From contig NIVC01000232.1 in the NCBI GenBank assembly GCA_002269645.1, positions 1 to 64,000 of the forward strand: a DNA stretch of 64,000 nt, read 5' to 3'. A program made the position numbers and the translations under genes. The notes under the pieces are model-generated. The model was not told the origin of the DNA. It made no database searches and saw only the letters and a list, made by a program, of their open reading frames with translations. Positions 15,143 to 64,000 of this stretch are shown here, piece after piece. How positions within the stretch are numbered: the stretch's first letter is position 1; each line of letters opens with the position of its first letter. The stretch comes from Macrostomum lignano (lineage: Eukaryota).

Positions 15143-15853
15143 TATAATTACGGCATTAAGCTGGAAATAGTGAAAATTAGCTACTCAGGTCAAAAATAAA
15201 ACAGCAGATAACGAACAATATTTTATCATTTCGTACAAACAACACAGCAGTGATAAAAATAGGAAAGCAGTAACTCGAAAAACAAGAGTCACAGCTAGTT
15301 ACGGCCTTGCTCAGCATTGCCAGTAATCTTAATTTTTCATATTCAATATCTTTAGTGTTTGAAATTGCTGCAAAAAGTAGAGCTGCTTCTGCTCGGATTA
15401 TTCGTAGCGTATACCCTGCAAAGAGAAATGGTATATAGCTCGTGTATGCGGAAACTGACTCGGGCATCGTGTTATGGTGCTGAAGCTTTAGCTATTTGCA
15501 CAAATGAGGCTTTTGGTGCTAATCAATTATTAAGGTAATTGAACGGAAAATTTAAAATATCTTAAACTCTTAGGATAAAACAGTATTTAAGAAATGATTA
15601 ATTTTAGACAAAAGCTCAAAAGTTTTAAAAACTCACCGAATTCTAGGATTCCATTCCAGCAAGCTCTTTACACATTTATGATAACATTTATGTAAACATT
15701 AATTTAAAATGCATTGTTGAAAAAAGCCGGCAACTAATGTAACTTTATCCTTCCTTCCGCAGTCCGTTGACAGCTGCCTCAAATGACTGGCTCATGTCTT
15801 CAGTATAGGCAATTTGAGATTTCCGGGTCTCTGCAGCATTCCTCTTTCTCACT

Positions 15854-17065: not shown

Positions 17066-17630
17066 CTTTATGATTTGATTTTCCAAAGTATTACTCGTAT
17101 AATACTTGCTTACGTCAATGATTGCTTACGTAGTTGCAAAGGAAGTTGCATATTAAAAACCAAGTCTATTTTTCCAAGTATGCGGCGATTCAAATGTATT
17201 TTAATGTCGATAAACTCGCAATGTTCCTGAAGGTTAAAGGCCAGTGGACAAATATTCAGAATAGAATGGTATATATGATAATATTATTCTTTTTCAATGC
17301 TGTAAATATTGCTGTTGTAGCCTACTGTATCTTATATCTAAAGCTGAGTGTACCAATCGATCGACCGGCCGGGTTTAACAAGGCGCCGCGGCCGCGGAAC
17401 GATTTTTTCCCAGGGGGCAAAGTTTCCGAAACTCAAGACCAGAAAGTGACAAAAAAGAGACAATGACACTCTCGGACAGTGACAAAAAATTGAGCAAAAC
17501 ACCTAAACTTAACTTTTTCTGCTTTCAAAAAAGGGGGCTCCACCCTTAGATATAGGCACAGCAGATATATTAATTTAATATGATTTGGCATCGTTGTTAT
17601 TTATATTTTAAAATCTCACTGACTCATGCA

Positions 17631-21014: not shown

Positions 21015-22471
21015 TTAAACCCTATAGTTCACTTTCACCTTGGCCTCTCGGGGGTGTGGTCGCAGCGCAATTGGAGGGGTCGCGGGTTCGCTCCCCGCAG
21101 CTTGCAGGATCGGCGGTGCGGTCTCCCCGACAGGAAAATCGGGCTCTGCATCTGGCGCTACCCGCTTCAGGTCAGTGCAGTGCCGCCTGCAAACTCTGGC
21201 GCCCTGCCGAATGGTCATCGAGTCGCCCTTGACACTCTCGACCAGCCAGGGTGTCCACTCGAACGGAGCCTCGCCCTTGAGCGGATTTAGTCGGCGCCGG
21301 AGCACCGTGTCGCCGACTTTGAGCCCATGCGGTCTCGCCTGCCGTCGCTTGTCCGTGTAGCGCTTGCCCTTTGCCTTGCTGCTGGCGTCCTGCTGTCGGA
21401 GCCTCCTGTCTGCGATGGCCACCGGTCTCGACGGCCTGATTGACGGGATGGCGTCGTTTGGGACGCGACCCAAGAGCAGCTCGGCTGGTGCCCGGTTGGT
21501 GGTTCGCTGCGGCGTGCAACGGTAGGCCAGCAGCCACTCGTCAAGGGCCGCCCTCCAGTCGCGCTTCTGGGCAATGGCAGCTCGTACAACCTTATTGATG
21601 GAGCGATTCAGGCGCTCAGTGATGCCGTTGGCCTGCGGATGCAGCGGTGTGATGAGACGCTGCCGGATTCCGTAGCTGTCCAGAAAGCCTTTGAACTGGG
21701 CCGAGGAGAATGGCGGGCCGTTATCGGTGACCAGTACCTGTGGGATGCCGAATCTGGCGAACGAATTCCTCAGCTTGGGAATCAGCGCTTCGGCCGTTGT
21801 GGTCTGGACGATCTCGACTTCAGGGAAGCGCGAGTAGTGGTCAACGCAGACGAGTAGCATGCTGCCTTGAATGGGGCCTAGCAGGTCTGCCCTAGTGTTA
21901 GCCATGCAGCTTTCGGGATCGGCGTCGGCTTCAGCGGCGCGGCGGTCACGTCGGCCGCGTGCGACGTAGCTGCACAGGCTCGGCAGGCACGCACGAAGAG
22001 CTCCGCTTCTGTCTGCATCCTCGGCCACCAGACTTTGGTGCTCAAACGGTCAACCGTCTTGCGCAGGCACTGATGACCGCGGTGTGCCAGGTCCAAAACC
22101 AGGCGCCGAAGCGCCATTGGAACTACGATTCTCTGGCCCCGCAGGAGCACGCCGTCCGCTGCCGATAGCTCATTCCGTAGGGCGTGGAGCGATCGCATCT
22201 CCGCCGACTCGAGGCTCCATCGTCCTGTCTCCAGCGATCGAATAGCGGCTTGAATTGTAGCATCTTGCAGCGAACTCTCTTGCACTGAGGACAGCGACAG
22301 CGCGTTCGGTATGGCCGCCTGGACGATTGCAGCGATGCAGAGGGTGTCGAGCTCTTCGCCGACATTTCTTCCTCGTGTTGGCAGCGGCTGCCGGCTCAGC
22401 ACGTCCGCTGGGTTAAGTGGGCCAGGCTGATATTCGACTGTAAATTTCATGTGCTGAATGCGCAGCGCCAT
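21015..22471 (-). pseudogene. Gypsy integrase (H2C2 plus DDE core, frameshifted)
   Basis: AHRGHQ..VWWPRM..CRAC; VDHYSRFPEV; VTDNGPPFSS; HPQANGITERLNR. Confidence 0.9.
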
Positions 22472-23917
22472 TCTTTCGATCCTCGGGGAGGCCTTGAGCC
22501 ACTGCTGAACAATGCGATGAGCGGCTTGTGGTCTGTCACCACCGTAAATGTCGGAGCGCCGTGCAGATAGTACTGAAATTTCAAGCAGCCGTATTTGACG
22601 GCCAGCGCCTCCTTCTCAGTCTGGGAGTAGCGCTGCTCAACATCGGATAGCGTCCGGCTGGCGTACGCGACAGGCCGGTTGGTGCCGTCCGCTTGCGTCT
22701 GCGTTAGGATCGCGCCCAGGCCCGCTGGGCCTGAAGAAGGCGAGGGTGCCGCTGGTCGCAATCCGGGTCTTCACGTCGTCAAAAGCTCGTTTCTCGAGGT
22801 CAGTCCATGCCCAGGGCTCGCCTTTCCTAGTCAGATTGCGCAGTGGCCTCGCTACATCCGCCAGCCCGGGGGTGAATGAGGCCAGATAGTTGACCAGGCC
22901 TAGGAACGAGCGCACCTCTGTGGCGGTCTTTGGCTCGGCAAATGCGTGGATGGCTTCCAACTTGGACTGGGTTGGTCTGACACCTTCACTGGACAGCTGC
23001 ATCCCCATAAACGTGACCTAGGTACGGGCGAGCTTGCATTTTAACGGATTCAGCGTCAGCCCGTGCTGCGCCAGTCGTCGCAGACATGCCTGCAGGTTGC
23101 TGTGGTGCTCGGCCACGCTGTGCCCATACACGATGATGTCGTCGTGAATCCATTTTACTTTCGGGAGTCCAGCTAGCACGGATGACATGACCGCCTGGAG
23201 AATTTCCTGGGCCGTAGACAGTCCCATACAGAGCCGTGTCAGCCGCCGCAGGCCTCGTGGTGTCGAAAAAGTCAGAAGATGGCGGCATTCGTCGGCGACT
23301 GGGATTTGATAAAATGCCTTCGCGATGTCGAGCTCTGAGAATAGCTGCGCTCCTGCCATGTCTCCCGTCACCTCCTCGAATGTCGGGATGGGATGCCGCT
23401 CTCTAATGACCGACTTGTTCAGGTCTCTCAAGTCCTGCGTAATCCTGATCTCGCCTGGAGTCTGCTTGGGCACGACGACGATGCGGGCTACCCACGGACA
23501 GGGGCCTTCCACCGGCTCGATGATGCCTTGGTCCTCGAGGCACTGCAGCTCGGCGTCGACTGCCTGTGCGAGATGTATTGGCACCCTTGATGGGGGATGA
23601 CAGACCGGCCTGGCTCCCTCCTCCAGGAAGATGCGGGCGGCATAGTTTTTGAGCCTGCCGATTCCGCTGAAGACTAGTGCGTTCTCCGTTAGGAGTTCGT
23701 GCAGGGCCGGTGCCCCCGGCGCATGTAGGACGTCCTTTGGGATCCCTGTTAGCATGCTGTCTAGCGAGACCTCGGGAGACGGACGCAGCTGGTATGCCAC
23801 CTTGTTCTCCGGGCCGACTCGCAGAATCTGAAGTCTTTCAGCGCTTCTCCGGCCAATGATGCAAGCGCCCTCACCGTCGAGCACCAAGAACGGTAGTGTC
23901 TCGTGGATCTCGAACAC
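22447..23917 (-). pseudogene. Gypsy reverse transcriptase and RNase H (broken)
   Basis: LDIAKAFYQI, WIHDDIIVYG, stop at 23018; RNase H YASRTLSDVEQRYSQTEKEALAV; pieces in different frames. Confidence 0.9.
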
Positions 23918-25053
23918 GCTGACTTGCAGGTCTGCCTTGCCAGCAATCTCAGCGGCTCTTGGCTTCCGTATGGGTAGACCTTGTCGCTGGTGGGCTGCAG
24001 CGCGGCTTTTTGCGGCATCCTGTCGTAGGCCGCCCTGTCGATGATGTTGCAGGCCGCGCCGCTGTCGATGAGCACCTTTGTCTTGAGCCCGTTAATTGTC
24101 GCAGGCGTCCAAGTAGAGCCGTAGTTCCTCAGGGTGAATAGCTCGTGCTCGATGGGGTCGTCTTGCAGATATTCGACTCGACCCGGCGGAGCCTCCTCCT
24201 GCGGTTCGTCAACGGTCCTCAGAGGGACTTTAGCTGCTCCTCGACACGCCCGAGCGAAATGACCCATCTTGCCGCAGCGTCGACACGCCTTGTTACGGGC
24301 TGCCTCGCACGTCTGATGTCCTGGTCGCCCGCAGCGATCGCAGTTGATGCCGCTGTCTCTTGCCGCGGCAGCCGGCCTGGTTGTATGGGATGGTCGGTTA
24401 CGAGGTGGACGCAGCGCCGCCACATTCGAAGCGGAAGGATGGCCCGTGTCGGCTGCGGCGCCGATCTCCATGGCCTGGGCCTGCTGCTCCGCTGCCTCCC
24501 TCGCTCGGATTCGCTTCAAAACGTCGTCTAAGGAGACATCGTTGAGCTGCAGGAGTTCCCTCCTGATCCTCTCGGACCGGTAATGAGCCACGATCTTGTC
24601 CCTGATGAGCGAGTCTCGGAGTTCGCCGAATGTACATTGGTCCGCAGCCTTGCGTAGCCGATGATACCAGGCCTCAATTGACTCTCCTTCCTCCTGCCGG
24701 CATATTTCAAACTGGTACCTGAGGAAGACAACGCTGTTCTTTTGGTCGAAGATACCCTGCAACTCTTTGATGAGCTCCTCCGCGGACTCTCCTTTCTTGA
24801 CGCCGTTATCGTCCATGAAGTCTTCCAGCTTCTCGCCCGCAGTGTAAACTAAGAGCTCCAGCTGCTGTGTCGCATCTGTGATGCCAGCTGCGCGTATGTA
24901 GCTGTTGAACCTTCGCGTCCAGGTTTTCCATCGCTGAGCTCTTGTCAGAGGATCGCCTTCGAGGTCAAAGGCGTCTGGTGCCGCGAGTTGCAGGGCCTGT
25001 GCCATATTTGCTGAATCACCGTTCGTTATCAGTGCGCAGGGGGTTGGCCTCAC
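23761..25053 (-). pseudogene. Gypsy gag with Zn knuckles and aspartic protease
   Basis: RQEEGESIEAWYHRLR..CTFG gag motif; CRRCGKMGHFARAC knuckle; IDSGA protease; frameshift before RT. Confidence 0.9.
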
Positions 25054-27425: not shown

Positions 27426-28279
27426 CAGTCCTTGGACTGAAAAACCATAAGAAGTTTTCTGATGCAAATAGCTGCGGTTAGCTGTCGGTTCGAATTCTGC
27501 CGATTTGGGCAGGTGTAATCAATAATTAAATAAAAAAAACAATCACATGATGATTCCCAATTTTTTCAACCTCTTACCTTTTGTCTGCAAGAAACAGCCA
27601 AATCGAAACACCAAGTCTACCTTTGGGATAGTAAGAAGATGTTCTTTCTTTAAGCTTTTCAGTTTTTGTTGCCAGTGCAGTATCTGTCATAAGGCTGTCC
27701 TTCTTATAGATATATGAGACAGAGGAGGCTGCTTCATTTTTTACCGAGTTTGAGAGCTTGTGAGTCACATTGTGCTGCATCCACCAGTCTACCCCTCCGC
27801 TGAAGTGTTTACTCTGGTTTCGGGCCTAAATTAGAGCTTAGACCGAGGCTCTGAAATATAATAGCGTACGTACGAGCTACGCACAGATTTTAATAAGAAG
27901 GGTGCTCGAAAAGTAGTAGATGCTACCAATGATGCATCGAGCCCCAACCAAGCAGGTTCCAGAAGCATAACGCTGGCACCTGTAGTGCATGAGCAATCGG
28001 ACTTGCTATTGTTCTCACCGTGTGTTTAAAGCCAGAGGTAAAAGCTCAGAGCAGACAAGCCTTCCCACGAGACGACGCTACTCGCGTATGTTCGCAAAAA
28101 AGCTGCTTACTTATGCTGCTTTCACTTTTATCTTGAATCACGTGATTTCGATTATCATAGAATATTTGCTGGACCAGCTTGAAAACTTAATTTAAATTTC
28201 GCTTTGATTTTTGTAAGTTTTGCATTGCCCTGTTGCCAGTTAAGCTAAAAGAAATCGGCTTTTCTCTCTGTTTATTGTT

Positions 28280-28280
<1 letters not shown>

Positions 28281-28336
<56 letters not shown>

Positions 28337-28337
28337 A

Positions 28338-28389
<52 letters not shown>

Positions 28390-28430
28390 ACCACTACTAC
28401 TACTACTACTTACCACTACTACCACTATTA
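28281..28430. repeat. (ACT)n microsatellite upstream of gene A
   Basis: Direct reading. Confidence 0.98.
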
Positions 28431-28634
28431 CTATCATCCATCAGCTATCAACCATCATCAACCATCAACTAAAACAGCTTAAGTACTGTGCATCATCTTA
28501 ACGCATGTACTTACATTTCGTTCAATTTTAGCCAGCTACTTCGCTCATATTCTGCACCAGACGACAAGAAATTTCAGTACCAGCTATATCGGCTTGCTTT
28601 TGACGCCATCCAGTCGCGCTAAGATCTGCTCGGC

Positions 28635-31600
28635 ATGAGTCAAAGCAGCTTAATAGATGTTGTAAAGGGTGGCGAGCAAGAGCAATTAAAAGCTTTAGTA
28701 GAGCAGACACATGACCCGAGAGCAAAAAACCAGTTATGCCAGGATGCAGTTTCTCTTTCTGCGCAAAACCAGAAATGGGAATTTGTGGAGTACTTGATGA
28801 GTTGTATTAGCGATGAAGATGCCAGGAGCCAGAGCTGCATAACGGCTTCCATTCACGCAATGAAGTTCAAACAGATGGATAAACTGGAATCATTCATAAA
28901 CAGCATGGGAGACAGCGAGCGGAAGGACAATTGGTGCCGTGAGATGGCAGAATCCGCCCAAATATGGCGCTCTTGGGATGTCGTGCAAATTCTCACAAAA
29001 GCCATCAGCAACCAAAGCTTGAAGGACCAATGCTGCCGCAACTTCGCTAACGCTGCTGCAGACAGCCAGGATTTACAGGTCCGAAATTTTTTTGTTGAAC
29101 TGAGCTCAGACGAGGAGTTGAAGCAACAGTTTAGCATGGAGGCAGCTGGAACTGCAACAAGCAATCAAGAGAAACAAGTTGCAGAAAAAGCATTGTTGGA
29201 GACACTAGAGCTGCTATCTAAAGAGGCCGCTGAACCAGAAGTGAGAAAGCAGTGCAGTGATGTCTTGGCACAGCACGAATCAGATCAACGGCTCTCAGTA
29301 ACAGTCGCAGCAAGGCATATCGGTGCCAAAGGCTACGCCCAACTTGTCAAAGCACTGCTCAATAAATTTGAAAATGAAAGCGAGAGACGTGAATTGTGCA
29401 TGACTGCTGCCGAATTTGCTGCTAGAAGTGGACACTTGGGACGAGTAAAGTCCGTGTTGCATGGCTGCGAAGACACAAGACTCAAGCATGAATGCTCAAT
29501 AAAAGTAGCTGAAGTTGCATCCAGGTGCGGTCACTTTGAAGTGGCAAAACATGCTATTGAAGCCATCAAAGACCAGAAACTAAGAGACAAGTGTTGCCTT
29601 AAGGCAGTCAAGGCGTCCGCAAAGAATCGTCAACTTTTTATCACAAAGTTTCTGGTAGACTCCGTTGCAGAAAATTTGAAAGACCAGTGCTGCAGCAGGG
29701 CCACTCCGCCTGCAGCAAAGAACGGTCATCTTGAGGTGGTGACCTATCTGGTTCAAGAAATGGTTGACAAGACTCTAAAAGATCAGTGCTGCAGCAGGGC
29801 CACTCCGCCTGCAGCAAAGAACGGTCATCTTGAGGTGGTGACCTATCTGGTTCAAGAAATGGTTGACAAAACTCTAAAAGTTCAGTGCTGCAGCAGGGCC
29901 ACTCCGCCTGCAGCAAAGAACGGTCATCTTGAGGTGGTGACCTATCTGGTTCAAGAAATGGTTGACAAAACTGTAAAAAATCAATGCTGCAAGAAATCTG
30001 CAGAATCCGCTTCGGATTCGCAAAAATGGGATGTCGTGAAATTTCTAGCTGAGTCTATCAGCAACCAGGGCCAAAAGGACGAGTGCTACGCGTCTGCTGC
30101 AGAATCTGCTGCTTGGAGTGGCAACTTGGAAAAGACGAAAGACTTTGTTAACAGCATCAATGATTCAAGCATTAAAAATCAGGGCTATCTGCGATCAGTG
30201 GAGTCAGCTGCCAACAATCTGAAGCTCGAAGTTGCGGAGTCTTTATTTCGGATGGAATTTCCACAATCTATTAAAGATAAAGGCAGATTAGTAGCAGTCA
30301 GACCGGCTGCCAAAAACGGCTACTTTGAATTCGTGAAGTTTATCATTGAGACAGTCTCAGAAAAGCAAGTGCGAGACAAGTGCTGCTTGACTGCAGTTGA
30401 GCCAGCGGCTTTCAACGGCCACACCGAGGTGGTGAATTTTCTGGTTCAGTCGGCTGAAGAGCCATCCGTCAGGCTGGAGTGCTGCATGAAGGCAGCGGAG
30501 TCCTCACAAAGTGGCGGTAAAACTGATGTATTCGATGCTATCTCAAAAGAAGTCGATGATCTGAAAGATGAAGGGCTGAAGGATCTCTACTACAGCAGGG
30601 CTGCTGAGTCTGCAGCACAATGCGGCGAAGCTGATGCCATGATGTCCTCGTTGCGGAATGTTCGCGATGCAAAACGGAGAGCTGAGTGCGACCGTCAATG
30701 CGCCCTCGCCGGAGCGTCTTTCGGACACGAAAACGTCGTAGAACGCTTTGATATTGAGCCGCAGTGGCTCTTTGACTTACCGCCGTTGCTTCAATTTTTC
30801 TCTATGATGGCACTGAAGAATGAAAACTCTATTTTAGACAAAACATTGTCAACCATGCAGCCGGCAGAAAAGTTTAGGCTTCTTCTACTATCGATTTACA
30901 GTGAACATGTTTCCCTGGCCTTCGCTATCCTGCGTCAGCTCACCAGAGATGTTTTTGACCTGCCAGACAGCGAAGGAGCCACTGCTCTCATGTTGGCAGC
31001 TGATTCAGGTCACCACGAGCTCATCGAGAAGCTTGTGGAACTCGGTGCATCTGTGCAAGTCCAAGACTGTCACGGTCGGACTGCTCTGACTCGAGCATGC
31101 GAAGCGGGTCACGTGCGAGCTGCAAAGAGCCTGATAGACAATGGAGCGGATGCGAGTCACCAAGACGATCGGGGTTTGACATGCGTGCAGTGGGCGGAGC
31201 AGCACGGACACACAGAGCTGCTTCGGATACTTGATTCTTTTTACTCAAGGTAAAATATTTATCAACTATGCACAAGTTTAATAATTGATTCCTCTTGAAA
31301 ATTGAAAAGCAAAATTAAGAACGTGAGCGCTATCATTTTTGTTATGCGGCATGTTTCGCCTCGAGTCAGGCATCGTCAGGCTCTAAAAAATTAGTAAGGA
31401 TTTATTTGTTTATTTATTTAACATTTTAGGCAAAACCGGGTCGATAAAGTCAGAAAAAAACATATAAATTAGCAGTAGATGCACAGTCCAGCCGAGTGCT
31501 CACAGAGTTTACAATGAGGTTACAACTTTCCACTGGGTTGGGCAGAAAGCATTGAAGCTTAGCAGAAGACGAAGAAGATATTAATTTCTGACTTTTTCGA

Positions 31601-34088
31601 CCCGGTTTTGTCTAAATTGTTAATAAATAAATAAATAAATCCTTACCAGCTTTAAGAGCCTGACGATGCCTGACGCGAGGCGAAATATGCCATATAACAA
31701 AATATGATAGCGCTCACGTTCTTAATCTTGAAAATTGCAAGTACGTATTCAAATATTTACGCATTTTAGGAACGAAAATCGCGCACAGGACGAGACGCTG
31801 AGCACGGAGTTGCACGAGCTGTTCAAGTCGGCAGGATTCACCCGCGACAGAGCCGAGTGCCAGCAGGCGATGGCCGACTACCTGCAGAGAATCGCCATTG
31901 CGGTGGTCCGTGACGACAGTTGGCTGACTGGCAGCTACGCAGAGGGCTGGGCGAACAGTCTGGTTCAAGTGAACGGCAGAACGGCGGATGACTCAGACAT
32001 CGACTGGACGGTCTTTGTTGCCGGACAGAAGTTTCATCTCCAGGGCGGGTGCTCCCAGACGGGAGAGTGTGCACAGGCTAATCAGCTGATGGTCACAAAA
32101 GGTCATGCTAATATTCTTGAGAGTTGTGGTACGTAGAAGTTTTTGCGACTGTTACCGCGGTAGTCATACTTTTCGTCAAAATTCTACACGTCCATACACA
32201 CAAGCTCTTATAGAAATCTGTACCTGAACCACTGCGATGTTATAATCTGAAATATTCGACACTATATATCTTCAACGTATTGTATCATTACATCAGATCG
32301 AGAATACCATTGTAATACTGTCTGATCCATGTATACCTTAAACCAATTAGAAGTCAAGTGTCAGAAAAAGGTACAGGCGGCCAAAACTCATCTACAAGGG
32401 TAAGAACAAAAAATAGTTGTTAAAAAACTAGAACAAATCATTTACATTTTAGGCAGCCAGCCTGCAGTATCAACGTCTCCAAGCGGCTTGAGACCGAGAA
32501 TGGACCTGTGCCATGCAATTAGGTGCTGCAGCGACTTTTGCACAGATACTGAAAGGATTAAATTCATCACTGATAGACTGCCAAAAGTTCATCTGGTGAG
32601 AGCAACCCGACCTACAAAGCAAACCCAAAACGAGCTCAGGGTGAGCTTCAGCTTACACGAAAAGCGAATCATGAGAAGCCTCTCTGATGTCCAGGGCCAA
32701 CTCTTCACAGTAATCAAGTTTATCTTCAAAAAATACTTACCCATCACACTGAAAACACCTGGACTCAAGACTTACCACGCAAAGACTCTGCTCTTCTTCA
32801 TGCTCGAGAAGCATGGAACCGAGCATTTTAATCAGGTTTGGAAGCCGGAAAAGCTGATTTCTCTTGTGAAAGAGGCTCTCGAAATGATGCTAAGCTTTAT
32901 CGACTCGAGTAGCTCGCCCGACGAGTGCATGCCGCACTTCTTCATGTCGGATGCTCCGCTGTACTTCAAGAACGCTGGAATCGGCGGCGACTTCGACAAC
33001 ACAAAGTCGAGGGTTCGACTCCGACTGAGCGAGGTGCGAAGAAACATTGGAGAAATAGTGAATGTGCTGAAAGAGCATTTAAGACCACTGCAGTCACAGA
33101 ACTTTTACTTCCACCCTTTTGCTCTACTGCCGTTGGCATCACCAAGTAGAGTGAGCGAAGTGAGACCGAGACGCAAAAACCAATACCTGCACTTTGCGGA
33201 TGCCTACTGTGTAATTTACCAGTGCCTGCAGAAGCTGACGTCAGCAGAAACGGATGAGGCCTCCCTAATGAATGACCTGCAACTTCTTGACCGACTGCAG
33301 TGGTGCAAGACTGCCGCACTCTGCCTCAATGTCATGGCGCACTTAAAGTTCGGAGAGGTTGTGGAGGCCGAGTCACCACTGAAGAGGCTCTGCAATCACT
33401 CTGCTCAGCTTGCTTGGACGCCAGAATGCTTTCCAACCAGTCGGCTGGAACATTGGGAGGTTCCCGACGACTCAGACTGGGCGTGGAGGTTCTGCTTTCC
33501 ATGCGACACTCGGCCTCGTTTTCCTTTTCTTCCCGAGTTCACGCAGACTCTGTTCATTGCCAGACTGTCTCAGCCTCGGTCCTCACACCTGTACGTGAAC
33601 TTCCGCTGCCTGAGCTGGAGTCTCCAAGCTGAGCTGCTCCGCGATCGAACACCCGAAAATAAAATCTCATTCGATGCTTGGAAGACTCAGCTGCAAGAGG
33701 ACCCGGACTTGGAGGAGCTGCTCACCCTGGCTCACTACAGCAACAGTCGCGAGCATGTGGAGTTCTGCTTGCAGCAGATGGAGATTGAAAGGACGAGATG
33801 CGCGTTGCCATGGAGTCTGTTGATATGGATAAGCTTCAGTCTGTCAGACTTAAATTCGAGAGATGCACCGCAGAAACGGCGTCAAAAGCGATATTGCAGA
33901 ATGAGAGTGAGCTTTCCAACTTCAGTGACATGATAGAAGTAGCTGATTCGCTTGTTGTTAAGTCTGAAACTGTGTCAGGGGTCGTGAAAATCGGCAGTGT
34001 TCTGTTCAGAATAGTAAAATCGCATTTCGGAATAGTTGTCATGTTGATTTTTATTGTAATTTTTGTGTTCTATCTTCCCGCTGTTTGA
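28635..34088 (+). CDS. Gene A: ankyrin-repeat / cGAS-like (Mab-21, cGLR) nucleotidyltransferase / C-terminal TM; exons 28635-31249, 31770-32128, 32453-34088 (1-nt deletion near 33788)
   Basis: In-frame junctions: phase 2 AG|GTAAAA..TTTTAG|G and phase 1 G|GTACGT..TTTTAG|GC. NTase motifs LTGSYAEG..DSDIDW, MDLCHAI, LRVSFS, KTYHAKTLLF, MPHFF. Three canonical ANK repeats end exon 1. Tail FGIVVMLIFIVIFVFYLPAV* lies in the shifted frame; as assembled the CDS stops at 33933 (1484 aa). Confidence 0.88.
31314..31726. mobile_element. Foldback element in intron 1 of gene A (~140-bp inverted arms, Penelope pLTR-like)
   Basis: ATTAAGAACGTGAGCGCTATCAT.. mirrored at ..ATGATAGCGCTCACGTTCTTAAT; each arm carries CTGACGA-stem-GAAA. 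Confidence 0.75.
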
Positions 34089-35424
34089 GTTCTTTATCGT
34101 TTATAGCGGAAAACTGAGTGGTACTCGACATATTTTACCCTTTTAATGATGAAACGTTTAAGCACACGAAGGACAGAACAGAAATATCGAAAAAAATTTG
34201 AGACTTTTAGGTACTGAGGAAAATTTGATACGACTAAAATGTTTTAATCTCATCTTATAATATAATTAAATCTTACACGTGAGAAAATTCAGATTGAAGA
34301 TACGAGCTATGTATATACTGTAATGTGTTTTGGTAAATATTGGCCTGTTAGTCTAGAACATTTTGCTTTTTGTTGTAAGATATGACTTTACAATTTACAA
34401 TTTAACTTTTCAGACAGTTTTTCTGTAGTATGAATCGAATGCTCCAATACTATACATTCGTTCGTTTAGTGCCTTGTATTTTGTTATCGGTTTTCCAAAC
34501 ATATTCTCTACAGTATAAATACGCGCTGTTGATCTGTTCATAATTTTAACAGTCGGGACCGGAGATCACGTGGTAGTCAAACCGTGACCATCGCGACAAC
34601 CCCTGGTTACCTGACCCGGGATGACACCGTTAGCCAAAGGGGAGGACTTTGGTGTAGCTTTAACGTTAGACCACCCTGGCTTAGCGACCCAGTAAGTACA
34701 CTCGATAGATAGAATATTGTTGAACCATCACTGAAAACCTGTTGTATAAGATTTTACCAGAGTGCAAGAGTAGCAAGACTAGGATCTTGTATATAGTGAC
34801 TCAAGTCATTGCGAGGTTAAGTTGAATTACATTGTGAGATATTTGGGATTAGAGTGCAACATTTTTAAAGTATGTAGCTAAAGCTATTGTCTAAATATGT
34901 TTTTTTTCCTTCAAACTTACCAATTTTAAATTTCTGTTGGTTAGTAATTGATCTACAATTGTTGAAGCCGTCATTTATGCGTTTAATTTTAATTTAATTT
35001 GATTATTTATGGTTGAGTTTTCCATTTTTTTGTTGCAACTACTGTTGAAAATCTAATAATTGCTTGTATTAGTTCTGGTTGCAGAATTGCTTTACGAGCG
35101 CGTAGTTATTAGCTTGTTAATAAAATTGTTTCAGTTCTGTCGTTAAATTGAGCGTGATACCAATTTTGTTCACTACAGGCCGTTAATATTGAGAGCTGCA
35201 ACTTTTAAACGTTCTTAGTATTTAATATTTAATATTTAATTGCCTAATAGAGGTTTCTTCTAGCACTGCCAGAAGACCCACCTAATGCATTTTTAACTAA
35301 CATGTACTTTAACCATCACTACTTTTGGCTTTTGGCCTCTCGCTACAATGTTTGTCTTATTGATTTTATCAAATAGATTTTCGTTAGCTAGAATTGGTTT
35401 AAAGTGTTTGGAACACGCAGGGGC

Positions 35425-35499
35425 ATTTTAGCCTAGTCGTTAGAGCATATGACTCACGACTGAAAGATTGGGGGTTCGATTCACGGCCCAATCGGAACA
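35425..35499 (+). mobile_element. SINE tRNA head (same family as 40770-40950)
   Basis: TAGCCTAGTCGTTAGAGC..GGGTTCGATTCACGGCCCAATCGG. Confidence 0.6.
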
Positions 35500-35610
35500 A
35501 TTCGATACTTGGAAGATGCGGCTGCAAGAGAACCCGGACTTGGAGGAGCTGCTTACTCTGGCTCACTACAGCAACAGTCGCGAGCATGTGAAATTCTGTC
35601 TACAAAAATG
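35500..35610 (+). pseudogene. Orphan fragment of cGLR exon 3
   Basis: FDTWKMRLQENPDLEELLTLAHYSNSREHVKFCLQK* versus gene A 33669-33780 FDAWKTQLQEDPDLEELLTLAHYSNSREHVEFCLQQM. Confidence 0.9.
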
Positions 35611-37149: not shown

Positions 37150-38160
37150 GACTGACACCAGCAGTCAACAACCTGCACCTTCCGCAAGACTTGCGACTGT
37201 CATCGATCATTAAGGAGTTCAGCGACAGGTTTCAAGGGATCGGCTGGATCAAGGACGTCTCAGTCAGCATCTAACTGAATTGGAACAAGTGTTGCCAGTC
37301 TGCCACCAAACCGCCGTGGAAAAGGAACTGAAAGACCAGCTAGCAGCCGGCATCCTGGAGCGAGTAACGGGTCCCAGAGCCTGGAGCTCACGTATGGTGG
37401 TCGTTCCGAAATCCTCGCCAGGTGAGATCTGCCTCTTGCACGCATGACCTGAGGTATGTCAATAAGTGCGTCATCCCAGAAAAGCAGACAATACCAACAT
37501 TTGAGGATGCCAACGACCAGATGGCCGTCTCCAACAAGTTCTTCGAACTGGACGTTGTCAAGGCCTTCCACCAGATCAAGGTCAGCGAGGAATCACAGCA
37601 GCTGCTCACCTTCTCAAAACCTCAAGCGCCTTTGCATGGGATTTACTCCAGCATCCGTCATGACATCTATCCTGAGCGGTTTGAGAGGCGTGCAGTGGGT
37701 TCATGGCGACATCATTATCTTTGCCAGCACCTTAAAAGAGCGCAGAGAGAGGCTGCTCAACTGCCTCAACAGGCTGCGCCAAAACAATGTGACTCTGAAC
37801 CCCCGCAAATGCCGCATTGCAACCCAACAGGCCGACTTCCTGGTCATGGACCTCTCGGCGGCCGGAATCCAACCGACCGAGGAAAGGCTGGAGGCTGTGG
37901 CCAACTTCAAGCGACCAGAAAATGCAACGGAGGTGCGGTCCTTCCTCGAACTCGTCACATTCGTAGCCCGCTTAATCCCAAACGTCGCCGACAAACCAAG
38001 GCCACTTCGAGAGCTGACCAAGAAGAATGCAACATGATCGTGTGGCTCACAGCAAGCCTCAGCCTTCCAGTCCATCAAGCAGTCGATCGCACACAGCACC
38101 ACACTGGCCTTCTTCAGCAAGAACTGCGAGATCAGCAAGTTGAACTGCGAGATTCAACAA
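37150..38160 (+). mobile_element. Degenerate Gypsy RT fragment related to the 20.6-25.2 kb element
   Basis: ELDVVKAFHQI, WVHGDIIIF, TEVRSFLELV, LRELTKKN across shifting frames. Confidence 0.85.
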
Positions 38161-38395
38161 AAGCTTCGGTGAAATCGAGCAGCCCTAGTCACAGACAGCG
38201 TTATGGGTATTTGCATTGTAACTTAGACTTGATTGAGATTGCGTAACCATATTGCTAACTTTTCTGGAGACTGATACTGACTGATTGAGAAATCGAGCAC
38301 GTAAGCTCGTATAACTGCTTTGTTTGACTTTTACTAAAACCGACTTGATATGAGTCGAATTATAAGCTGTTCTACGACTCTAGCTACTCTAGATT

Positions 38396-42077: not shown

Positions 42078-45000
42078 TCAAACAGCGGGAAGATAGGATA
42101 CGAAAATGACAATAACAATCAACACGACAACTATCAAGAAGTGCAATGCTAGTATTCTGAGAATACTGCCAATTTTCTTGACCCGTGACACAATTCCTGA
42201 CTGAATGAGTAGCAAATCAGTGGCTTCTATCACGGCACCAAAGTCGGAAAGCTCACTCATCCATATTTTCTTGACCAATTGAAGCTTATCTTTATCAACC
42301 CTCTCCATGGCAACGCGCCCCTCGTCTTTTACAATCTCCATCTGTCTCAAGCAGAACTCCACATGCTCGCGACTGTTGCTGTAGTGAGCCAGGGTGAGCA
42401 GCTCCTCCAAGTCCGGGTCCTCTTGCAGCTGAGTCTTCCAAGCATCGAATGAGATCTCATTTTCGGGTGTTCGATCGCGGAGCAGCTCAGCTTGGAGACT
42501 CCAGCTCAGGCAGCGGAAGTTCGCGTACAGGTGTGAGCACCGAGGCTGCGACAGTCTGGCAGTGAGCAGAGACTGCGTGAACTCGGGAAGAAAAGGAAAA
42601 CGAGGCGGAGAGTCGCACGGAAAGCAGAACCTCCACGCCCAGTCTAATTCGAGAGGTACTTCCCACGTACTCCGGTTCTTGAATCTTCGATTTGATAACA
42701 GCTCTGGGTCCCAAGCAGTCTGTATGGAGTGACTCTGAAGTCCAGTTAGTGTTACCTCAGCCTTCTTAGCCTCACCAAACTTGAGGTGAGCCATGGCAGT
42801 GAGACACAAAAAGGCACATTTAAACCAATTCAGCTGGTCCAACAGACTGAGTTGAGTCGCGAGGTCATCTTGATTAGTGTGATCTGACTGGAGCAGCTGC
42901 AAGCAGTGATGCACTACGCAGTAAGCATCCGCAAGGTGTAGGTACTGATCAGTGTACTTTGACGTGACTTCTTTCACTCTAGCTGGATGCGTGAGTGGTA
43001 GAATGGTGAACGGATGGAAAAAGAAGTTCTGTGACTGCAGTGGTCTCAGCTGTTCCATGAATTGCTCAATTACTCCTTCGATGCCGAATCTCAACTCACT
43101 CAGTCGGAGTCGAACCCTCGACTTCGTGTTGTCGAAGTCGCCGCCGATTCCAGCGTTCTTGAAGTAGAGCGGAGCGTCTGACATGAAGAAGTGCGGCATG
43201 CACTCATCGGGCGAGCTGCTCGAGTCGATGAAGCTCAGCATCATTTCAAGAGCTTCTTTCACAAGAGAAATCAGATTTTCCGGTTGCCAAGCCAGATTAA
43301 AATCCTCGGTTCCGTGCTTCTCGAGCATGAAGAAGAGCAGAGTCTTTGTGTGGTAAGTCTTGAGTCCAGGTGTTTTCAGTGTGATGGGTAAGTATCTTTT
43401 GAAGATAAACTTGATTACTGTGAAGAGTTGACCCTGGACATCAGAGAGGCTTCTCATGATCCTCTTTTCGTGTAAGCTGAAGCTCACCCTGAGCTCGTTT
43501 CGAGTTTGCCTTGTAGGTCGGGTAGCACTGACGAGATGAACATGTAGTCCTGGATCGTCAGCGTTGGGGCGTATAACCAATTTTTTGAGCAATTTTCTGT
43601 TTTCTGTACAATAGCTACTGCAGCACTTTATGGCATAGCACAGGTCCTGTGTTGGTCGAACACCGCCTGCTGGTGTCGTGACTGCTGGCTGGCTTCCTAT
43701 ATGGTGGATAATAGTTGAGTAAAAAATTCTGGACTGCATGAGTAGGAATGCGGGCTTAAAAACGTCGGAAGTGATATTCTCTTTACGGTAACTTTTTAGC
43801 GGTCAAAGGATTTTTAGCTCGTATTTAAAATTTGTCAGGATTTTTTCTGGGATCAGTTTCAAAGAAGCACCTGTAATATCTATATTATTTGAATAAAATG
43901 GCCTCCTCATAATTATGCTTTATTTCAACGAACCTACCACACAAACCACTCTTTTCTCTCGGAGGGGCCAACATTTTATATTACTTTAGTCTGACTAACT
44001 AGCGTGTCATGTACGGTTTTACACTAAATATTCTTAACTTACCGGACCCTTCATTCACTTGGGCGTGTCCGTTTGTCACACGTAACTTGGTGCCGGGTGG
44101 ACAATGGCAGTGGTTATTCAAATGCATTATCAGTCCAGCAATGAACACAGTCCAGTCGATGTCTGACTCAGCTGCTGTTCTGCCATTTACTTGCATTAGG
44201 CTATTAGACTATCCCTCTGCGAAGCTACCCGTAATTTCTATTTCGCCTTGAACAATAGAAATTGCAACTCTTTGAAGGCAGTCGGCCATTGCCTGCACGC
44301 TCTGAGCTCTGGAACTCGTGAATCCGGACTTTTTCAGCAAATCGTGTAGTTTTAGGCTTTTATTGTTGCCGTCGTTGCTTCTGAAAAGAATATTTTGACT
44401 CAATCGACAATTATTTTGGAAAGTAACAGCAGCTTAGAGTCATTAATGCAGTTTGTTCTCTAATAAATAAACTTCTATTTAAATGCACCATTAAAATTAC
44501 CTTAGACTTGTCGCTTCCAGCAATCGCAGCACCTCGGTGTGTCCTCGATTCTCTGCAAGCTGCGCGCAAGTCAGACCCTGATTGTCTCGATGGCTTGCAT
44601 TCGCCCCAGAGTCTATTAGAGACTTGACCGCACGCACGTGACCTGAATTGCACGCTCGAGTCAAAGCGGTTCGACCGAGACTATCTTGAGCATTTACTGA
44701 AGCATCGTGCTTTATCAGTTTCTCGATGAGCTCGTGGTGACCTGCATCAGCAGCTAGCATGAGAGCTGTGGATCCATCTTTGTCTGACAGATCGACTTGC
44801 TGTTTGCAGACAAAAGGCACTAGCGCTAAGGCAAGTGCGACGCAGCCTTTTGAAATTGATTCCGTTAAAAGATGATGAGTTTCAGCTTTACTCATACGAG
44901 GCAAAAGTTTTTTAAGAATTGAATTCTTTCCTTCCCTCGCCAACTTTGAAAAGAAATCCACGAAGTCTTTGTCTTCCTTAAGCCATTGGGGCTGAAGATC

Positions 45001-47029
45001 GAAGTAGTCTACGATGTGTTGGTGATGAAAGGAAGCTCCTGCCCTTGCACATATGTGGTTGCATTCTTCAACGTCGCCGTTTTTATTTTTAATTTGGTCC
45101 AAAAAACGTAGCATGCTATCCTTTCTTCCGGACTGAGCTGCTGATTCCGCGGCCATTTTTGCTAAGTCGTAATTAAAATCTCTGGATACGATATGAAACA
45201 CTTCAGGGTGGCCGCCACTTCCTGAACCTCTCACCGCTTTTAGGTGACATTCGTGCTTAGCAAAGGCACTTACTGATCGCATTAAGTAGTGCACCACTCT
45301 GGAGTGACCGTTGAATGCAGGCCGCAGCGTGCTCCACGGCAGTCAAGCAGCACTTGTCTCGAACTCGATCTTCAAACACGGTTGTAATGAGAAATTCAAC
45401 AAAATCAAGGTACTTGTCTTTGGACGCGTGCTTCATCGCTCTTTCATAGCCTTCATTTCGCAGGACCTGAGTAACTGACTTCATCTGAACTAATGATTTG
45501 ACGACATTAAATTTCAGATTACTGGCCGCTGACTCAATTGACTTAAGATAGCTCTGACCCTTCCGGTGCGGATCAGCGATTTTTGACACAAAGAATTTCG
45601 TTTCTTCTGCCTCTCCGCTCCATGCGGCTCGTTCTGCAGCGGTTTCGTAGCAGTCATCTTTACCGTCATCTGAGCTGACAGATTCTGCCAGAAATTTAAC
45701 TACAGACCATTTTTGGTTATCTGACGCAGCCTTTACAGCATTCTTGCAGCACAGATCTTTGCGTCGTTCGTCTTTGATTCTGTTCACCAGATCAGTTACC
45801 GTCTCCAGATCGCCATTTCTTGAAGCTGGCTCAGTGGCATCGCTACAGCACTGGTCTTTCAGCTCATCTGCAATCGATTCGACAAAGAACCACATTGTCG
45901 ATATTTCTCGATTCGAGGCGAATTTTTCTGCCGCTCTCATGCAACAATCATTTCTAGCCTCGGGATCATCGATGGCACGAACGCAATATTTAGCCATATC
46001 GCAGTGAATTCTCTCGGCAGCGATTTCAGCAACTTTCAGACAGCGCGCATGCTTGAATCTTTTGTCAGTGCAGCTGTCTAAAAGGAACTTGACGACATCA
46101 AACATATCGGCTTTAGCAGCTGACTGTGCAGCAACCATACCGCAGGCGTGCATTTCAAACTTATCGTATAGATTTATCAGTACTAGCCGCAAAACTTCTA
46201 AGTACCCCTTTCGGCCAGCGTATCTTGCTGCCTGCCGGCCAGTGGTAGTCGTGCCTTTGAGTAGCTCGAGTGCTTTTTCCATCTCAAGTTTTTCGTTCTC
46301 ATAGACCTCTAATATATGAAAGCAAATGGCTTTAACATTTTCGTTCGATTTACTCTGCAATATTTTTATGATTTCAATAAAATTATCCTCGGCCATACTC
46401 TTCCTTGCTTTAGCGCTTTGATTAGCCAGTGCTTTCAGCTCTGTTGCCACATCCGACTGGCTGCAACCAGCTGCAACTTCAGCCAGCTCTAAGCAACAAC
46501 GAGCCCTCACTATGTTGTCGGCGATCTTCTCGATATACGACCTCACGCGTTTCCACTGTTGATTATCTGCAGCAGCTTTTGCAGACACCTCGCAGCAAAT
46601 AATTTTCAATGGCTCTGTACTTTTTTCAATCAACGTATCCAGAAGCTTCCATTTCTGCCAATTAGCAGCAGTCTTCACCATGTCGAAGTAAAATTGGTCT
46701 CTTGAACTTCTGTCTGATTCTTGCGGTTCGTGAAAGCTTTTGTCATCCAATTGACATAGATTTTCAGCTACTTGTATGTAGCACTGACTTTTAAAACGCT
46801 CGTCACAAATAGCTTGCACCAAGATTTTCAATATCTTCCATGAAATAGGGTTGTGCATACATTTACTGGATGCATGTAAAGCTGCGATCCTGCATACTTC
46901 ATACCTCTGCTTTACGTCTTGCATTTCTTCTACCATATGCTCAACGCTTTGTAGATCGCCTTCATTTATCGCCTTCAGTATTTTCCCGTACTTGAAATTG
47001 ATGACTGCTTCGACTTTCCTTGACGCCAT
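42078..47029 (-). pseudogene. Gene B: inverted paralog of A (ANK-cGLR-TM), disrupted; exons 47029-44501, 44380-44043, 43696-42078
   Basis: Same intron phases (2 then 1) as A; motifs ITGSFAEG*..ESDIDW, QDLCYAI, KTYHTKTLLF; intact TM tail. Apparent ~7-nt insertion frameshift near 45325; TAG at 44209-44211 where A has Trp. Confidence 0.85.
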
Positions 47030-50385: not shown

Positions 50386-50397
50386 GTCCCCTTCTAA

Positions 50398-52327
<1,930 letters not shown>

Positions 52328-52429
52328 TTCCCATGTAAGCCTTGCTATCTCAGCTATTCCCTGTAAACTGTGACGTCTCAGTGATTCCCCCCCCCCCAGT
52401 CTTGGCATCTCATCAATTTTCCCCTAGCC

Positions 52430-62199: not shown

Positions 62200-62455
<256 letters not shown>

Positions 62456-62693: not shown

Positions 62694-64000
62694 ATGAGTC
62701 AAAACAGCTTAAAAGATGTTATTAATGGTGGCGATCTAAAAAAGTTAAAAACTTTAGTAGAGCAGACGCATGACTCGAACGCGAAAAACCAGTTATGCCA
62801 GGATGCAGTTTTGCTTGCTGTGCAAAACCAGAAATGGGAAATGGTGGAGTATTTGATAAGTTGTATTGGCGATGAAAACGTCAGAAACCAGAGCTGTATA
62901 ACCGCCGCCAATCACGCAATGAAGTTCAAACAGGTGGATAAACTGGAATCATTCATAAACAGCATCGGAGACAATCAGCTAAAGGACAATTGGTGCGCTG
63001 AGATGGCAGAATCTGCCCAAATATGGCGCTCTTGGGATGTCGTGCAAATTCTCACAAAAGCCATCAGCAACCAAAGCTTGAAGGACCAATGCTGCCGCAG
63101 ATTCGCTATCGCTGCTGCAGACAGCCAGGATTTACAGGTCCGAAATTTTTTTGTTGAACTGAGCTCAGATGAGGAGTTGAAGCAACAGTTTAGCATGGAG
63201 GCAGCTGGAACTGCAACAAGCAATCAAGAGAAACAAGTTGCAGAAAAAGCATTGTTAGAAACACTGGAGCTGCTGTCGAAAGAGGCCGCTGAACCAGAAG
63301 TGAGAAAGCAGTGCAGTGATGTCTTGGCACAGCACGAATCAGATCAACGGCTCTCAGTTACAGTCGCAGCAAGGCATATCGGTGCCAAAGGCTACGCCCA
63401 ACTTGTCAAAGCATTGCTCAATAAATTAGAAAATGAAAGTGAGAGACGTGAATTTTGCATGGTTGCTGCTGAATATGCTGCTAGAAGTGGACACTTTGAA
63501 CGAGTAGAGTCCGTGTTGCATGGCTGCAAAAGCACAAGACTGAAGGATGAATGCTCAATAAAAGTAGCTGAAGTTGCATCCAGTTGCGGTCACTTTAAAG
63601 TGGCAAAATATGCCATTGAAGCCATCAAAGACCAGAAACTAAGAAATAAGTGCTGTCTCAAGGCTGCTGAGGCATCCGCAAAGAATCGTCAGCTTGAGAT
63701 CACAAAGTTTCTGGTAAACTCTGTTGCAGACAACTTGAAGGACCAGTGCTGCAACAGGGCCACTCCGCCTGCAGCAAAGAACGGTCATCTTGAGGTGGTG
63801 ACCTATCTGGTTCAAAAAATGGTCGACAAAACTCTTAAAGATCAGTGCTGCAAGAAAGCTGCAAAATGCGCTTCGGATTCGCAAAAATGGGATGTCGTGA
63901 AGTTTCTAGCTGCGTCTATCAGCAACCAGGGCCAAAAGGACGAGTGCTACGCGTCTGCTGCAGAATCTGCAGCTTGGAGTGGTAGGTTTGAAGAGACGGA
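62694..64000 (+). CDS. Gene C: 5' part of a close paralog of A (ANK exon), open to the window end
   Basis: MSQNSLKDVINGGDLKKLKTLVEQTHD.. aligns colinearly with A from 28635; not in the ORF track because no stop falls inside the window. cGLR exons are predicted beyond 64000 but not seen. Confidence 0.85.
   Translation, partial: MSQNSLKDVINGGDLKKLKTLVEQTHDSNAKNQLCQDAVLLAVQNQKWEMVEYLISCIGDENVRNQSCITAANHAMKFKQVDKLESFINSIGDNQLKDNWCAEMAESAQIWRSWDVVQILTKAISNQSLKDQCCRRFAIAAADSQDLQVRNFFVELSSDEELKQQFSMEAAGTATSNQEKQVAEKALLETLELLSKEAAEPEVRKQCSDVLAQHESDQRLSVTVAARHIGAKGYAQLVKALLNKLENESERREFCMVAAEYAARSGHFERVESVLHGCKSTRLKDECSIKVAEVASSCGHFKVAKYAIEAIKDQKLRNKCCLKAAEASAKNRQLEITKFLVNSVADNLKDQCCNRATPPAAKNGHLEVVTYLVQKMVDKTLKDQCCKKAAKCASDSQKWDVVKFLAASISNQGQKDECYASAAESAAWSGRFEET

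What the first reader, a model, noticed from the sequence alone, without database searches (positions are those of the whole stretch)
28635..34088. Ankyrin / cGAS-like nucleotidyltransferase / tail-anchor receptor revealed by splicing
Seen: three separate track ORFs join in frame through canonical GT-AG introns (31250-31769, 32129-32452) into one ~1,500-aa protein, and paralog B has the same intron phases. The NTase signature (GS..DSDID plus a third Asp in MDLCHAI) and Mab-21 motifs (RVSFS, YHAKTLLF, PHFF) are intact. Known: these motifs define the cGAS/Mab-21 (cGLR) family, whose members make nucleotide second messengers in animal innate immunity. Inference: a membrane-tethered receptor in which a variable ankyrin-like solenoid senses a ligand and gates second-messenger synthesis. 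cGLRs with accessory domains exist, but I do not recognise this atypical-ANK plus tail-anchor combination.
Basis: partly seen in the sequence, partly recalled or inferred. Interest (0 to 1): 0.9.

Follow-up and report, generated by a model that had tools for sequence, protein, structure and literature searches.

The report
Flatworm ankyrin-fused cGAS-like enzyme gene
This is a three-exon Macrostomum lignano gene joining a long ankyrin-repeat region to a cGAS-like enzyme domain; this gene family is already catalogued, and the membrane anchor is out of frame here.

Summary
The splicing is real. Exons 28635-31249, 31770-32128 and 32453 onward join in frame through GT-AG introns, at the same junctions as annotated Macrostomum lignano paralogs. 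The exon 2-3 domain is a cGAS-like nucleotidyltransferase. A structure model (pLDDT 92) matches only cGAS structures, and the catalytic residues Gly-Ser, Asp-x-Asp and a third Asp are intact.

Two parts of the finding fail:
- The tail-anchor ORF (33789-34088) is in a different frame. Gene A lacks one base at 33787/33788, so the protein as assembled ends at 33933 (1,484 aa) with no membrane segment.
- Paralog B in this window is disabled by an in-frame TAG and a 7-bp insertion.

The novelty claim is also weaker than stated. Li et al. 2023 already list ankyrin-cGLR fusions as an architecture, include M. lignano proteins with ankyrin repeats in their domain table, and cloned two members of this subfamily (about 60% identical) for their enzyme screen. 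Neither was among their 15 labelled active enzymes.

The C-terminal anchor appears only in the A/B subclade, and I found no description of it. Enzyme activity, ligand and downstream receptor remain inferred. Verdict: a new member of a known kind, with modest interest.

The parts
28635..31249 (+). Gene A exon 1 (871 codons plus 2 bases): N-terminal ankyrin region
   Evidence: ORF from ATG 28635. It ends at an AG|GT donor and joins exon 2 in frame.
28728..30749 (+). About 20 degenerate 33-residue ankyrin-like repeats (D-QCC-x-A-x3-AA-x-GH-x-EVV-x-FLV); boundaries approximate
   Evidence: 33-residue register in the segmentation. Pfam Ank_2 gives six stretches on exon 1, and pure arrays of this repeat score Ank_2 at E=3e-55.
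29679..29991 (+). 99-bp tandem repeat, 3.2 copies, 96% matches: three near-identical ankyrin-like repeats
   Evidence: Tandem Repeats Finder.
30939..31232 (+). Canonical ankyrin repeats (residues 769-866)
   Evidence: Pfam Ank_2 769-844, Ank 781-811, Ank_4 818-866.
31250..31769 (+). Intron 1 (520 nt, GT-AG, phase 2), mostly a foldback MITE-like insert at 31310-31730
   Evidence: nested inverted repeats.
31770..32128 (+). Exon 2: N-terminal part of the nucleotidyltransferase core, with Gly-Ser at 31930-31935 and Asp-Ile-Asp at 31996-32004
   Evidence: G53 is invariant and S54 and D75 are at least 90% conserved in the 28-sequence alignment. They lie at the end of strand 1 and the start of strand 2 in the model.
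32129..32452 (+). Intron 2 (324 nt, GT-AG, phase 1)
32453..33933 (+). Exon 3 as assembled, up to TGA 33931-33933. Holds the third catalytic Asp (32503-32505), Mab-21_C (about 32728-32955) and a family-specific C-terminal extension (about 33154-33786)
33787..33788 (+). Frameshift site: a two-base remnant (GA) of the codon that is GTA in paralog B
   Evidence: A-B alignment and frame translations.
33789..34088 (+). Tail ORF, out of frame with exon 3 (99 codons plus stop). Hydrophobic segment GIVVMLIFIVIFVFYLPAV at 34029-34085, ending at the C-terminus
   Evidence: Mean Kyte-Doolittle hydropathy 2.92. Its two indels relative to B are multiples of three.
42078..47029 (-). Paralog B: exon 1 47029-44501, exon 2 44380-44043, exon 3 43696-42078, with the tail anchor in frame. 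Disabled here by TAG at 44211-44209 and a 7-bp insertion at 45327-45321
62694..64000 (+). Paralog C (start of exon 1, cut by the window end): a tandem duplicate of A
   Evidence: 88% nucleotide identity to 28280-29793. Its translation matches the N-terminal part of P0009 by eye; not scored.
35324..35608 (+). Relic fragment of a cGLR C-terminal extension
   Evidence: tblastn, 44% identity to gene A domain residues 476-561, E=1e-15.

Best explanation
Gene A is one copy of a large Macrostomum lignano expansion of ankyrin-repeat-fused cGAS-like receptors (cGLRs, Mab-21 nucleotidyltransferase family).

Shown:
- It has three exons.
- The N-terminus has about 700 residues of degenerate 33-residue ankyrin-like repeats, followed by three or four canonical ankyrin repeats.
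- Next comes a cGAS-fold catalytic domain with an intact Gly-Ser / Asp-x-Asp / Asp active site.
- Then a family-specific helical extension of about 210 residues.
- Last is a C-terminal hydrophobic tail that is in frame in the B lineage but shifted by a one-base deletion in A as assembled.

Inferred: the protein sits in the cytosol, since it has no signal peptide. If the tail is translated, the protein would be anchored by its C-terminus with everything else facing the cytosol. On binding a still unknown ligand or partner, plausibly through the fast-evolving ankyrin region, it would make a nucleotide second messenger, as characterised cGLRs do.

The locus shows gene birth and death: A and C are tandem duplicates, B is a disabled inverted copy, and a relic fragment lies nearby. 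Gene A may therefore be a recently damaged copy rather than a working gene.
For: - All 29 protein hits but one are M. lignano proteins carrying Ank and/or Mab-21_C domains.
- Pfam Mab-21_C scores 27.4 bits against a cutoff of 24.1.
- A family profile hits only cGAS, cGLR1 and Mab-21 chains in the PDB with any significance (best E=1.2e-8).
- The AlphaFold model has pLDDT 92 and pTM 0.92. Its top 50 Foldseek matches are all cGAS, at E about 1e-9 and TM 0.55-0.60 over about 380 columns.
- G53 is invariant and S54 and D75 are at least 90% conserved in the family. Gene A also has D77 and D136.
- dN/dS between A and B is 0.21-0.40 across the solenoid, the catalytic domain and the extension.
- Splice junctions match annotated paralog models.
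- Li et al. 2023 classify M. lignano proteins of this subfamily as cGLRs and list ankyrin-cGLR as an architecture.
- The tail's two indels relative to B are multiples of three (45 and 3 nt), which argues for coding constraint until recently.
Against: - No activity data exist for this protein.
- The two closest tested paralogs (rows 92 and 93 of Table S3, about 60% identical) carry no active-enzyme label in Li et al..
- Pfam's N-terminal Mab-21 model (PF03281) gave no hit at E<=0.01.
- The tail anchor is out of frame in A.
- No A-like tail exists in the protein database.
- Neighbouring copy B is clearly disabled.
- Whether M. lignano has STING was not tested. The planarian Schmidtea mediterranea is reported to lack both cGAS and STING.
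Confidence: 0.6

Rival explanations
1. The one-base deletion at 33787/33788 is real, and gene A is a decaying copy. It would make either a soluble 1,484-residue protein with 48 junk C-terminal residues or no stable product. The locus would then be a graveyard of recent duplicates rather than a working receptor gene.
For: - The frame as assembled stops at 33933.
- Paralog B, 8 kb away, has a nonsense codon and a 7-bp insertion.
- A relic fragment lies at 35324-35608.
- A foldback element sits in intron 1.
- No identical or A-like tail protein is in the public collection.
Against: - The other 1,436 codons are open.
- dN/dS against B is 0.21-0.40.
- The tail ORF stays open for 99 codons, and its two indels relative to B are in-frame.
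- The missing base adjoins an A-run, which I regard as a typical site for long-read assembly indels.
- The reference contig differs from this window by other single-base indels.
Confidence: 0.3
2. The Mab-21 domain is not an enzyme. It would be a nucleotide-binding or purely structural scaffold on a membrane, like the mitochondrial adaptors MiD49/MiD51 or MAB21L1, with the ankyrin region recruiting partners.
For: - By my recollection, other Mab-21 family members are membrane-anchored and catalytically silent (MiD49/51).
- The M. lignano constructs were not among the labelled active enzymes in the Li et al. screen.
- Some family members have lost catalytic residues. P0035 and P0036 have Asn in place of the second Asp, and P0040 lacks the first.
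Against: - Gene A keeps all five catalytic positions.
- G53, S54 and D75 are at least 90% conserved across 28 diverse members.
- The best structural and profile matches are active cGAS and cGLR1. MAB21L1 and MB21D2 score far lower, at E=0.029 and 0.38.
- Li et al. note that in-vitro inactivity is expected when the ligand is unknown.
Confidence: 0.1

Closest known systems
Ankyrin-fused cGLRs catalogued by Li et al. 2023 (cGLRs are a diverse family of pattern recognition receptors; PMC9980059), including M. lignano PAA93208.1 and PAA68676.1
   Same: Same species and same subfamily, about 60% identical over the catalytic domain and extension. They share the GSYAEGW...DSDIDW...QD(T/L)C motifs and an N-terminal ankyrin region. 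Ankyrin-cGLR is a named architecture in their Figure 1C, and M. lignano accessions with Ank_2 appear in their Table S2.
   Different: Gene A itself has no match in the protein search above 87% identity. A and B carry a C-terminal hydrophobic tail, which is absent from the other 168 family sequences examined (one chimeric-looking model scores marginally) and is not mentioned in that paper's text or tables.
Vertebrate cGAS and Drosophila cGLR1 (PDB 4o69, 4k9b, 8gjy and others)
   Same: Same bilobed nucleotidyltransferase plus Mab-21_C fold (TM 0.55-0.60) and the same catalytic motif layout.
   Different: Sequence identity is only 12-16%. A single-sequence search of the PDB finds nothing. I saw no counterpart of the vertebrate zinc-ribbon DNA-binding insertion (by eye; not tested). 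Gene A adds an ankyrin N-terminus of about 870 residues, a C-terminal extension of about 210 residues and a tail. Its ligand is unknown.
MiD49/MiD51 (MIEF2/MIEF1), membrane-anchored Mab-21-fold proteins (from my own knowledge, not tested here)
   Same: A Mab-21-type nucleotidyltransferase fold tethered to an organelle membrane by a single helix, facing the cytosol.
   Different: MiD proteins are anchored at the N-terminus, lack the catalytic residues and have no ankyrin repeats. Here the anchor is C-terminal and the active site is intact.
P0001 = BOX15_Mlig015951g2 (M. lignano, partial model)
   Same: It corresponds to paralog B: 99.8% protein identity over exon 3 and 97.9% nucleotide identity across the locus. 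It shows ankyrin, cGLR and tail anchor in one open frame.
   Different: It is 70% identical to gene A. The model is partial at the N-terminus. The contig that encodes it lacks the first 1.2 kb of exon 1 and has its own single-base difference from this window.

Membership tests
cGAS-like receptors (cGLR; Mab-21 / CD-NTase superfamily) | cGAS-type bilobed nucleotidyltransferase fold | tested here: met
   AlphaFold model with pLDDT 92 and pTM 0.92. The top 50 Foldseek PDB matches are all cGAS, at E about 1e-9, probability 1.00 and TM 0.55-0.60.
cGAS-like receptors (cGLR; Mab-21 / CD-NTase superfamily) | Active-site motif G[GS]...[DE]x[DE]...[DE] on the core strands | tested here: met
   G53-S54, D75-I-D77 and D136 are present in gene A. 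G53 is invariant and S54 and D75 are at least 90% conserved. They sit at the strand 48-52/helix junction, the start of strand 75-89 and strand 134-143 of the model. Metal-site geometry was not measured.
cGAS-like receptors (cGLR; Mab-21 / CD-NTase superfamily) | Match to curated Mab-21 profiles | tested here: inconclusive
   PF20266 Mab-21_C scores 27.4 bits against a cutoff of 24.1, so it is met. PF03281 (the N-terminal Mab-21 domain) gave no hit at E<=0.01. A family profile reaches cGAS at E=1.2e-8.
cGAS-like receptors (cGLR; Mab-21 / CD-NTase superfamily) | Synthesis of a nucleotide second messenger on ligand binding | not testable with these tools
   The closest tested paralogs (Table S3 rows 92 and 93) carry no active-enzyme label.
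cGAS-like receptors (cGLR; Mab-21 / CD-NTase superfamily) | A cognate receptor such as STING in the same genome | not tested
   No sensitive search of the M. lignano proteome was possible with the tools and caps available. The planarian S. mediterranea is reported to lack STING.
Tail-anchored membrane proteins | A single hydrophobic helix at the extreme C-terminus of the translated protein, with no signal peptide | tested here: not met
   For gene A as assembled, the hydrophobic segment (34029-34085, hydropathy 2.92) is in a different frame from the rest. The feature is met for the B-lineage protein P0001 (hydropathy 3.53, six residues after the segment).
Ankyrin-repeat proteins | Tandem 33-residue repeats matching the Ank profiles | tested here: met
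   On exon 1, Ank_2 scores E=2.8e-40 with six stretches, and Ank, Ank_3, Ank_4 and Ank_5 also hit. The 33-residue register is shown.

The most novel reading that the evidence does not exclude
The A/B subclade would be a previously undescribed tail-anchored class of ankyrin-cGLR. It would hold an active second-messenger synthase on the cytosolic face of an organelle membrane. This would occur in the one flatworm lineage that kept and greatly expanded cGLRs while most flatworms lost them. Sister clades fuse the same cGLR module directly to a caspase domain, which hints at signalling routes that do not pass through STING.
Probability: 0.2. Interest if true: 0.6.

Novelty: new member of a known kind. 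Interest (0 to 1): 0.3.

Why it matters
If the tail-anchored form is expressed and active, it would be a case of a cGLR positioned by a C-terminal membrane anchor. It would also give a handle on what the large Macrostomum cGLR expansion senses, since Li et al. report that most flatworms lack cGLRs. As it stands, the main value is corrective. The gene belongs to a family already catalogued and partly screened, the claimed continuous 1,500-residue frame is broken before the anchor, and the neighbouring paralog is disabled.

Tried and rejected
- A single-sequence phmmer search of the 564-residue domain against the PDB found nothing, even at E<=10. A family profile was needed.
- The first AlphaFold run, with 8 sequences over 564 residues, was poor. 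It had pLDDT 60 with the catalytic core below 50, and its Foldseek result was ambiguous. It was replaced by a 28-sequence, 352-residue run.
- A protein search with the tail ORF found no scoring hit, so no intact A-type allele could be shown.
- Literature searches for a tail-anchored or transmembrane cGLR found none.
- Searches for STING in Macrostomum gave nothing usable.
- I considered a short intron that would restore the tail frame. I rejected it because A and B are colinear across the site, with conserved residues on both sides.
- I considered that the window might come from another Macrostomum species. I rejected this because paralog C appears by eye to encode the N-terminal part of M. 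lignano P0009, and flanks reach 99.7% identity to the M. lignano assembly.
Full report
**What is in the sequence**

The window is eukaryotic DNA. The ORF at 28635-31253 ends at an AG|GTAAAA donor. A TTTTAG|G acceptor at 31769/31770 opens a 359-nt exon, which ends at TG|GTACGT (32128/32129). A second TTTTAG|G acceptor at 32452/32453 opens the last exon. Joining the three pieces gives one open frame of 1,484 codons, ending at TGA 33931-33933. The junction peptides FYSR|NENRAQ and ESCG|SQPAV are the same as in annotated Macrostomum lignano gene models P0009 and P0001. Paralog B on the minus strand has introns at the same positions and phases, but of different lengths (120 and 346 nt). Nucleotide similarity between A and B is confined to the exons. 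The splicing claim therefore stands.

**What does not hold**

It does not.

- The hydrophobic tail ORF (33789-34088) is in a different frame from exon 3.
- Aligned with paralog B, gene A lacks one base (ATTG-AAAGG against ATTGTAAAAG), leaving a two-base codon remnant at 33787-33788.
- On both sides of that point the two genes are colinear and conserved (MEI / KDE.RVAME), so a hidden intron is excluded.
- With the base present, the frame would be 1,536 codons.
- The two indels between the A and B tails are 45 and 3 nt, both multiples of three. The tail stays open for 99 codons.
- The deletion is therefore either recent, polymorphic or an assembly error next to an A-run. I cannot tell which.

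Paralog B, cited as support, is disabled in this window. TAG at 44211-44209 replaces the Trp of GSFAEGW, and a 7-bp insertion (CTGCGGC, 45327-45321) shifts exon 1 relative to the M. lignano reference contig.

**Organism and family**

A search with the exon 2-3 protein returned 29 proteins. All but one unnamed JGI sequence are from M. lignano, and most carry Ank and/or Mab-21_C domains.

- P0001 (BOX15_Mlig015951g2) is 99.8% identical to B over exon 3. Its contig matches the window at 97.9% across the gene and up to 99.7% in flanks.
- A third paralog, C, starts at 62694 and runs off the window. It is 88% identical to A at the DNA level. Its translation matches the N-terminal part of P0009 by eye; I did not score it.
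- The window is therefore M. lignano.
- The locus holds A and C as tandem duplicates about 34 kb apart, B inverted between them, and a relic fragment at 35324-35608.
- An exhaustive profile search found 696 cluster representatives at E<=1e-3, of which 88 were at E<=1e-30. Many are 800-2,400 residues long, with the cGLR domain preceded by a long N-terminal region. This points to a very large expansion.

**Is it a cGAS-like enzyme?**

- Pfam gives Mab-21_C just above threshold (27.4 against 24.1 bits). The N-terminal Mab-21 model gives no hit.
- A single-sequence search of the PDB finds nothing.
- A 28-sequence family profile significantly hits only cGAS, cGLR1 and Mab-21 proteins, with a best E of 1.2e-8.
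- A first structure model from a shallow alignment was poor. A second, from the 28-sequence alignment, has pLDDT 92 and pTM 0.92.
- The top 50 Foldseek matches of the second model are all cGAS, aligned over about 380 columns with TM 0.55-0.60.
- Gly53-Ser54, Asp75-x-Asp77 and Asp136 are present (codons at 31930-31935, 31996-32004 and 32503-32505). They lie where the nucleotidyltransferase motif requires: after strand 1, at the start of strand 2, and on a later strand.
- dN/dS between A and B is 0.21-0.26 for the solenoid and the catalytic domain, and 0.40 for the C-terminal extension.

Family membership is therefore well supported. Enzyme activity is not shown.

**The ankyrin region**

Exon 1 holds about 20 degenerate 33-residue repeats of the form D-QCC-x-A-x3-AA-x-GH-x-EVV-x-FLV. 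Three or four canonical ankyrin repeats follow. Pfam scores both kinds as ankyrin. Three repeats form a 99-bp tandem array at 96% identity, and P0009, the model that corresponds to paralog C, has fewer repeats than A. This fits a fast-changing surface. That it binds the activating ligand is only inference.

**The tail anchor**

Among 170 family sequences examined, only P0001 (hydropathy 3.53) and the A tail ORF (2.92) end in a strongly hydrophobic segment. One further sequence, P0055, scored marginally (2.03), but it is a 3,379-residue model that looks chimeric. The anchor is thus a feature of the A/B subclade. It is demonstrably in frame with ankyrin and cGLR domains only in the partial model P0001. 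A protein anchored this way would face the cytosol entirely.

**Comparison with what is known**

Li et al. 2023 (PMC9980059) report the following:

- Ankyrin-cGLR is a recognised architecture.
- Most flatworms have no cGLRs apart from Mab21-like proteins.
- M. lignano accessions with Ank_2 domains appear in their domain table.
- Five M. lignano proteins were cloned for their 140-enzyme screen. Two of them (PAA93208.1 and PAA68676.1) belong to this very subfamily.
- Active enzymes carry a label in that table, and the M. lignano rows do not.
- The authors note that many cGLRs look inactive in vitro for want of their ligand.

I found no paper describing a tail-anchored or transmembrane cGLR. By my own recollection, MiD49/51 are Mab-21-fold proteins with an N-terminal anchor and no catalytic residues. 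Whether M. lignano has STING could not be tested. The planarian S. mediterranea is reported to lack both cGAS and STING.

**Verdict**

Splicing and the enzyme domain are real, but the continuous frame to the anchor is not.
It is a cGLR with ankyrin repeats, but the mechanism is inferred and the novelty was overstated.
- Gene A is a new, unannotated member of a known and already catalogued kind.
- The C-terminal anchor of the A/B subclade is the only element that may be undescribed.

Noticed in passing
window 62694-64000 (+): A third paralog, C, is cut by the window end. It is 88% identical to gene A at the DNA level, and by eye it encodes the N-terminal part of M. lignano P0009. The upstream homopolymer microsatellite is duplicated with it (28233-28472 and 62171-62470).
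   Followed up: partly
window 31310-31730 (+), inside intron 1 of gene A: A foldback, MITE-like element of about 420 bp with nested inverted repeats (31-52 nt arms, 83-94% complementary). It accounts for most of the size difference from B's 120-nt intron 1.
   Followed up: partly
window 35324-35608 (+): An isolated fragment, 44% identical at protein level to the C-terminal extension of gene A (residues 476-561). It is probably a relic of another paralog.
   Followed up: no
window 15833-17086 (-) and 57577-60603 (-): Long arrays of near-identical 99-bp (33-residue) QCC-type ankyrin-like repeats with no cGLR domain nearby. A similar array lies upstream of the B-type gene on the reference contig (L001 2792-5644). 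It is unclear whether they are separate genes or detached exons.
   Followed up: partly
relatives P0035 (1,099 aa) and P0036 (2,111 aa), from the representative search: Family members in which the cGLR domain is followed by ankyrin repeats and a caspase domain (Peptidase_C14, E=3e-25 and 3e-27). Both have Asn in place of the second catalytic Asp. 'Peptidase_C14' and 'CASc' do not occur in the stored (partly truncated) supplementary tables of Li et al.
   Followed up: partly
L001 9912 / window 45492, and L001 upstream of 9604: The reference M. lignano contig has its own single-base difference in exon 1 of the B-type gene. It also lacks the first 1.2 kb or so of that exon, which may explain why P0001 is annotated as partial. 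No fully intact copy of B was seen.
   Followed up: partly
genes A and B, exon 3 versus exon 1: Synonymous divergence between A and B falls from 2.6 in the 5' solenoid to 0.4-0.8 in exon 3. Blocks of 93% nucleotide identity (32587-33033 and 33468-33838) suggest gene conversion at the 3' end.
   Followed up: partly
window 21015-25053 (-), 37422-38246 (+), 10890-11363 and 50354-52408: A retrotransposon with integrase, reverse transcriptase and zinc-knuckle Gag ORFs (possibly Gypsy-type; not typed), a degraded reverse-transcriptase fragment, and two long microsatellite tracts with strong GC skew.
   Followed up: partly
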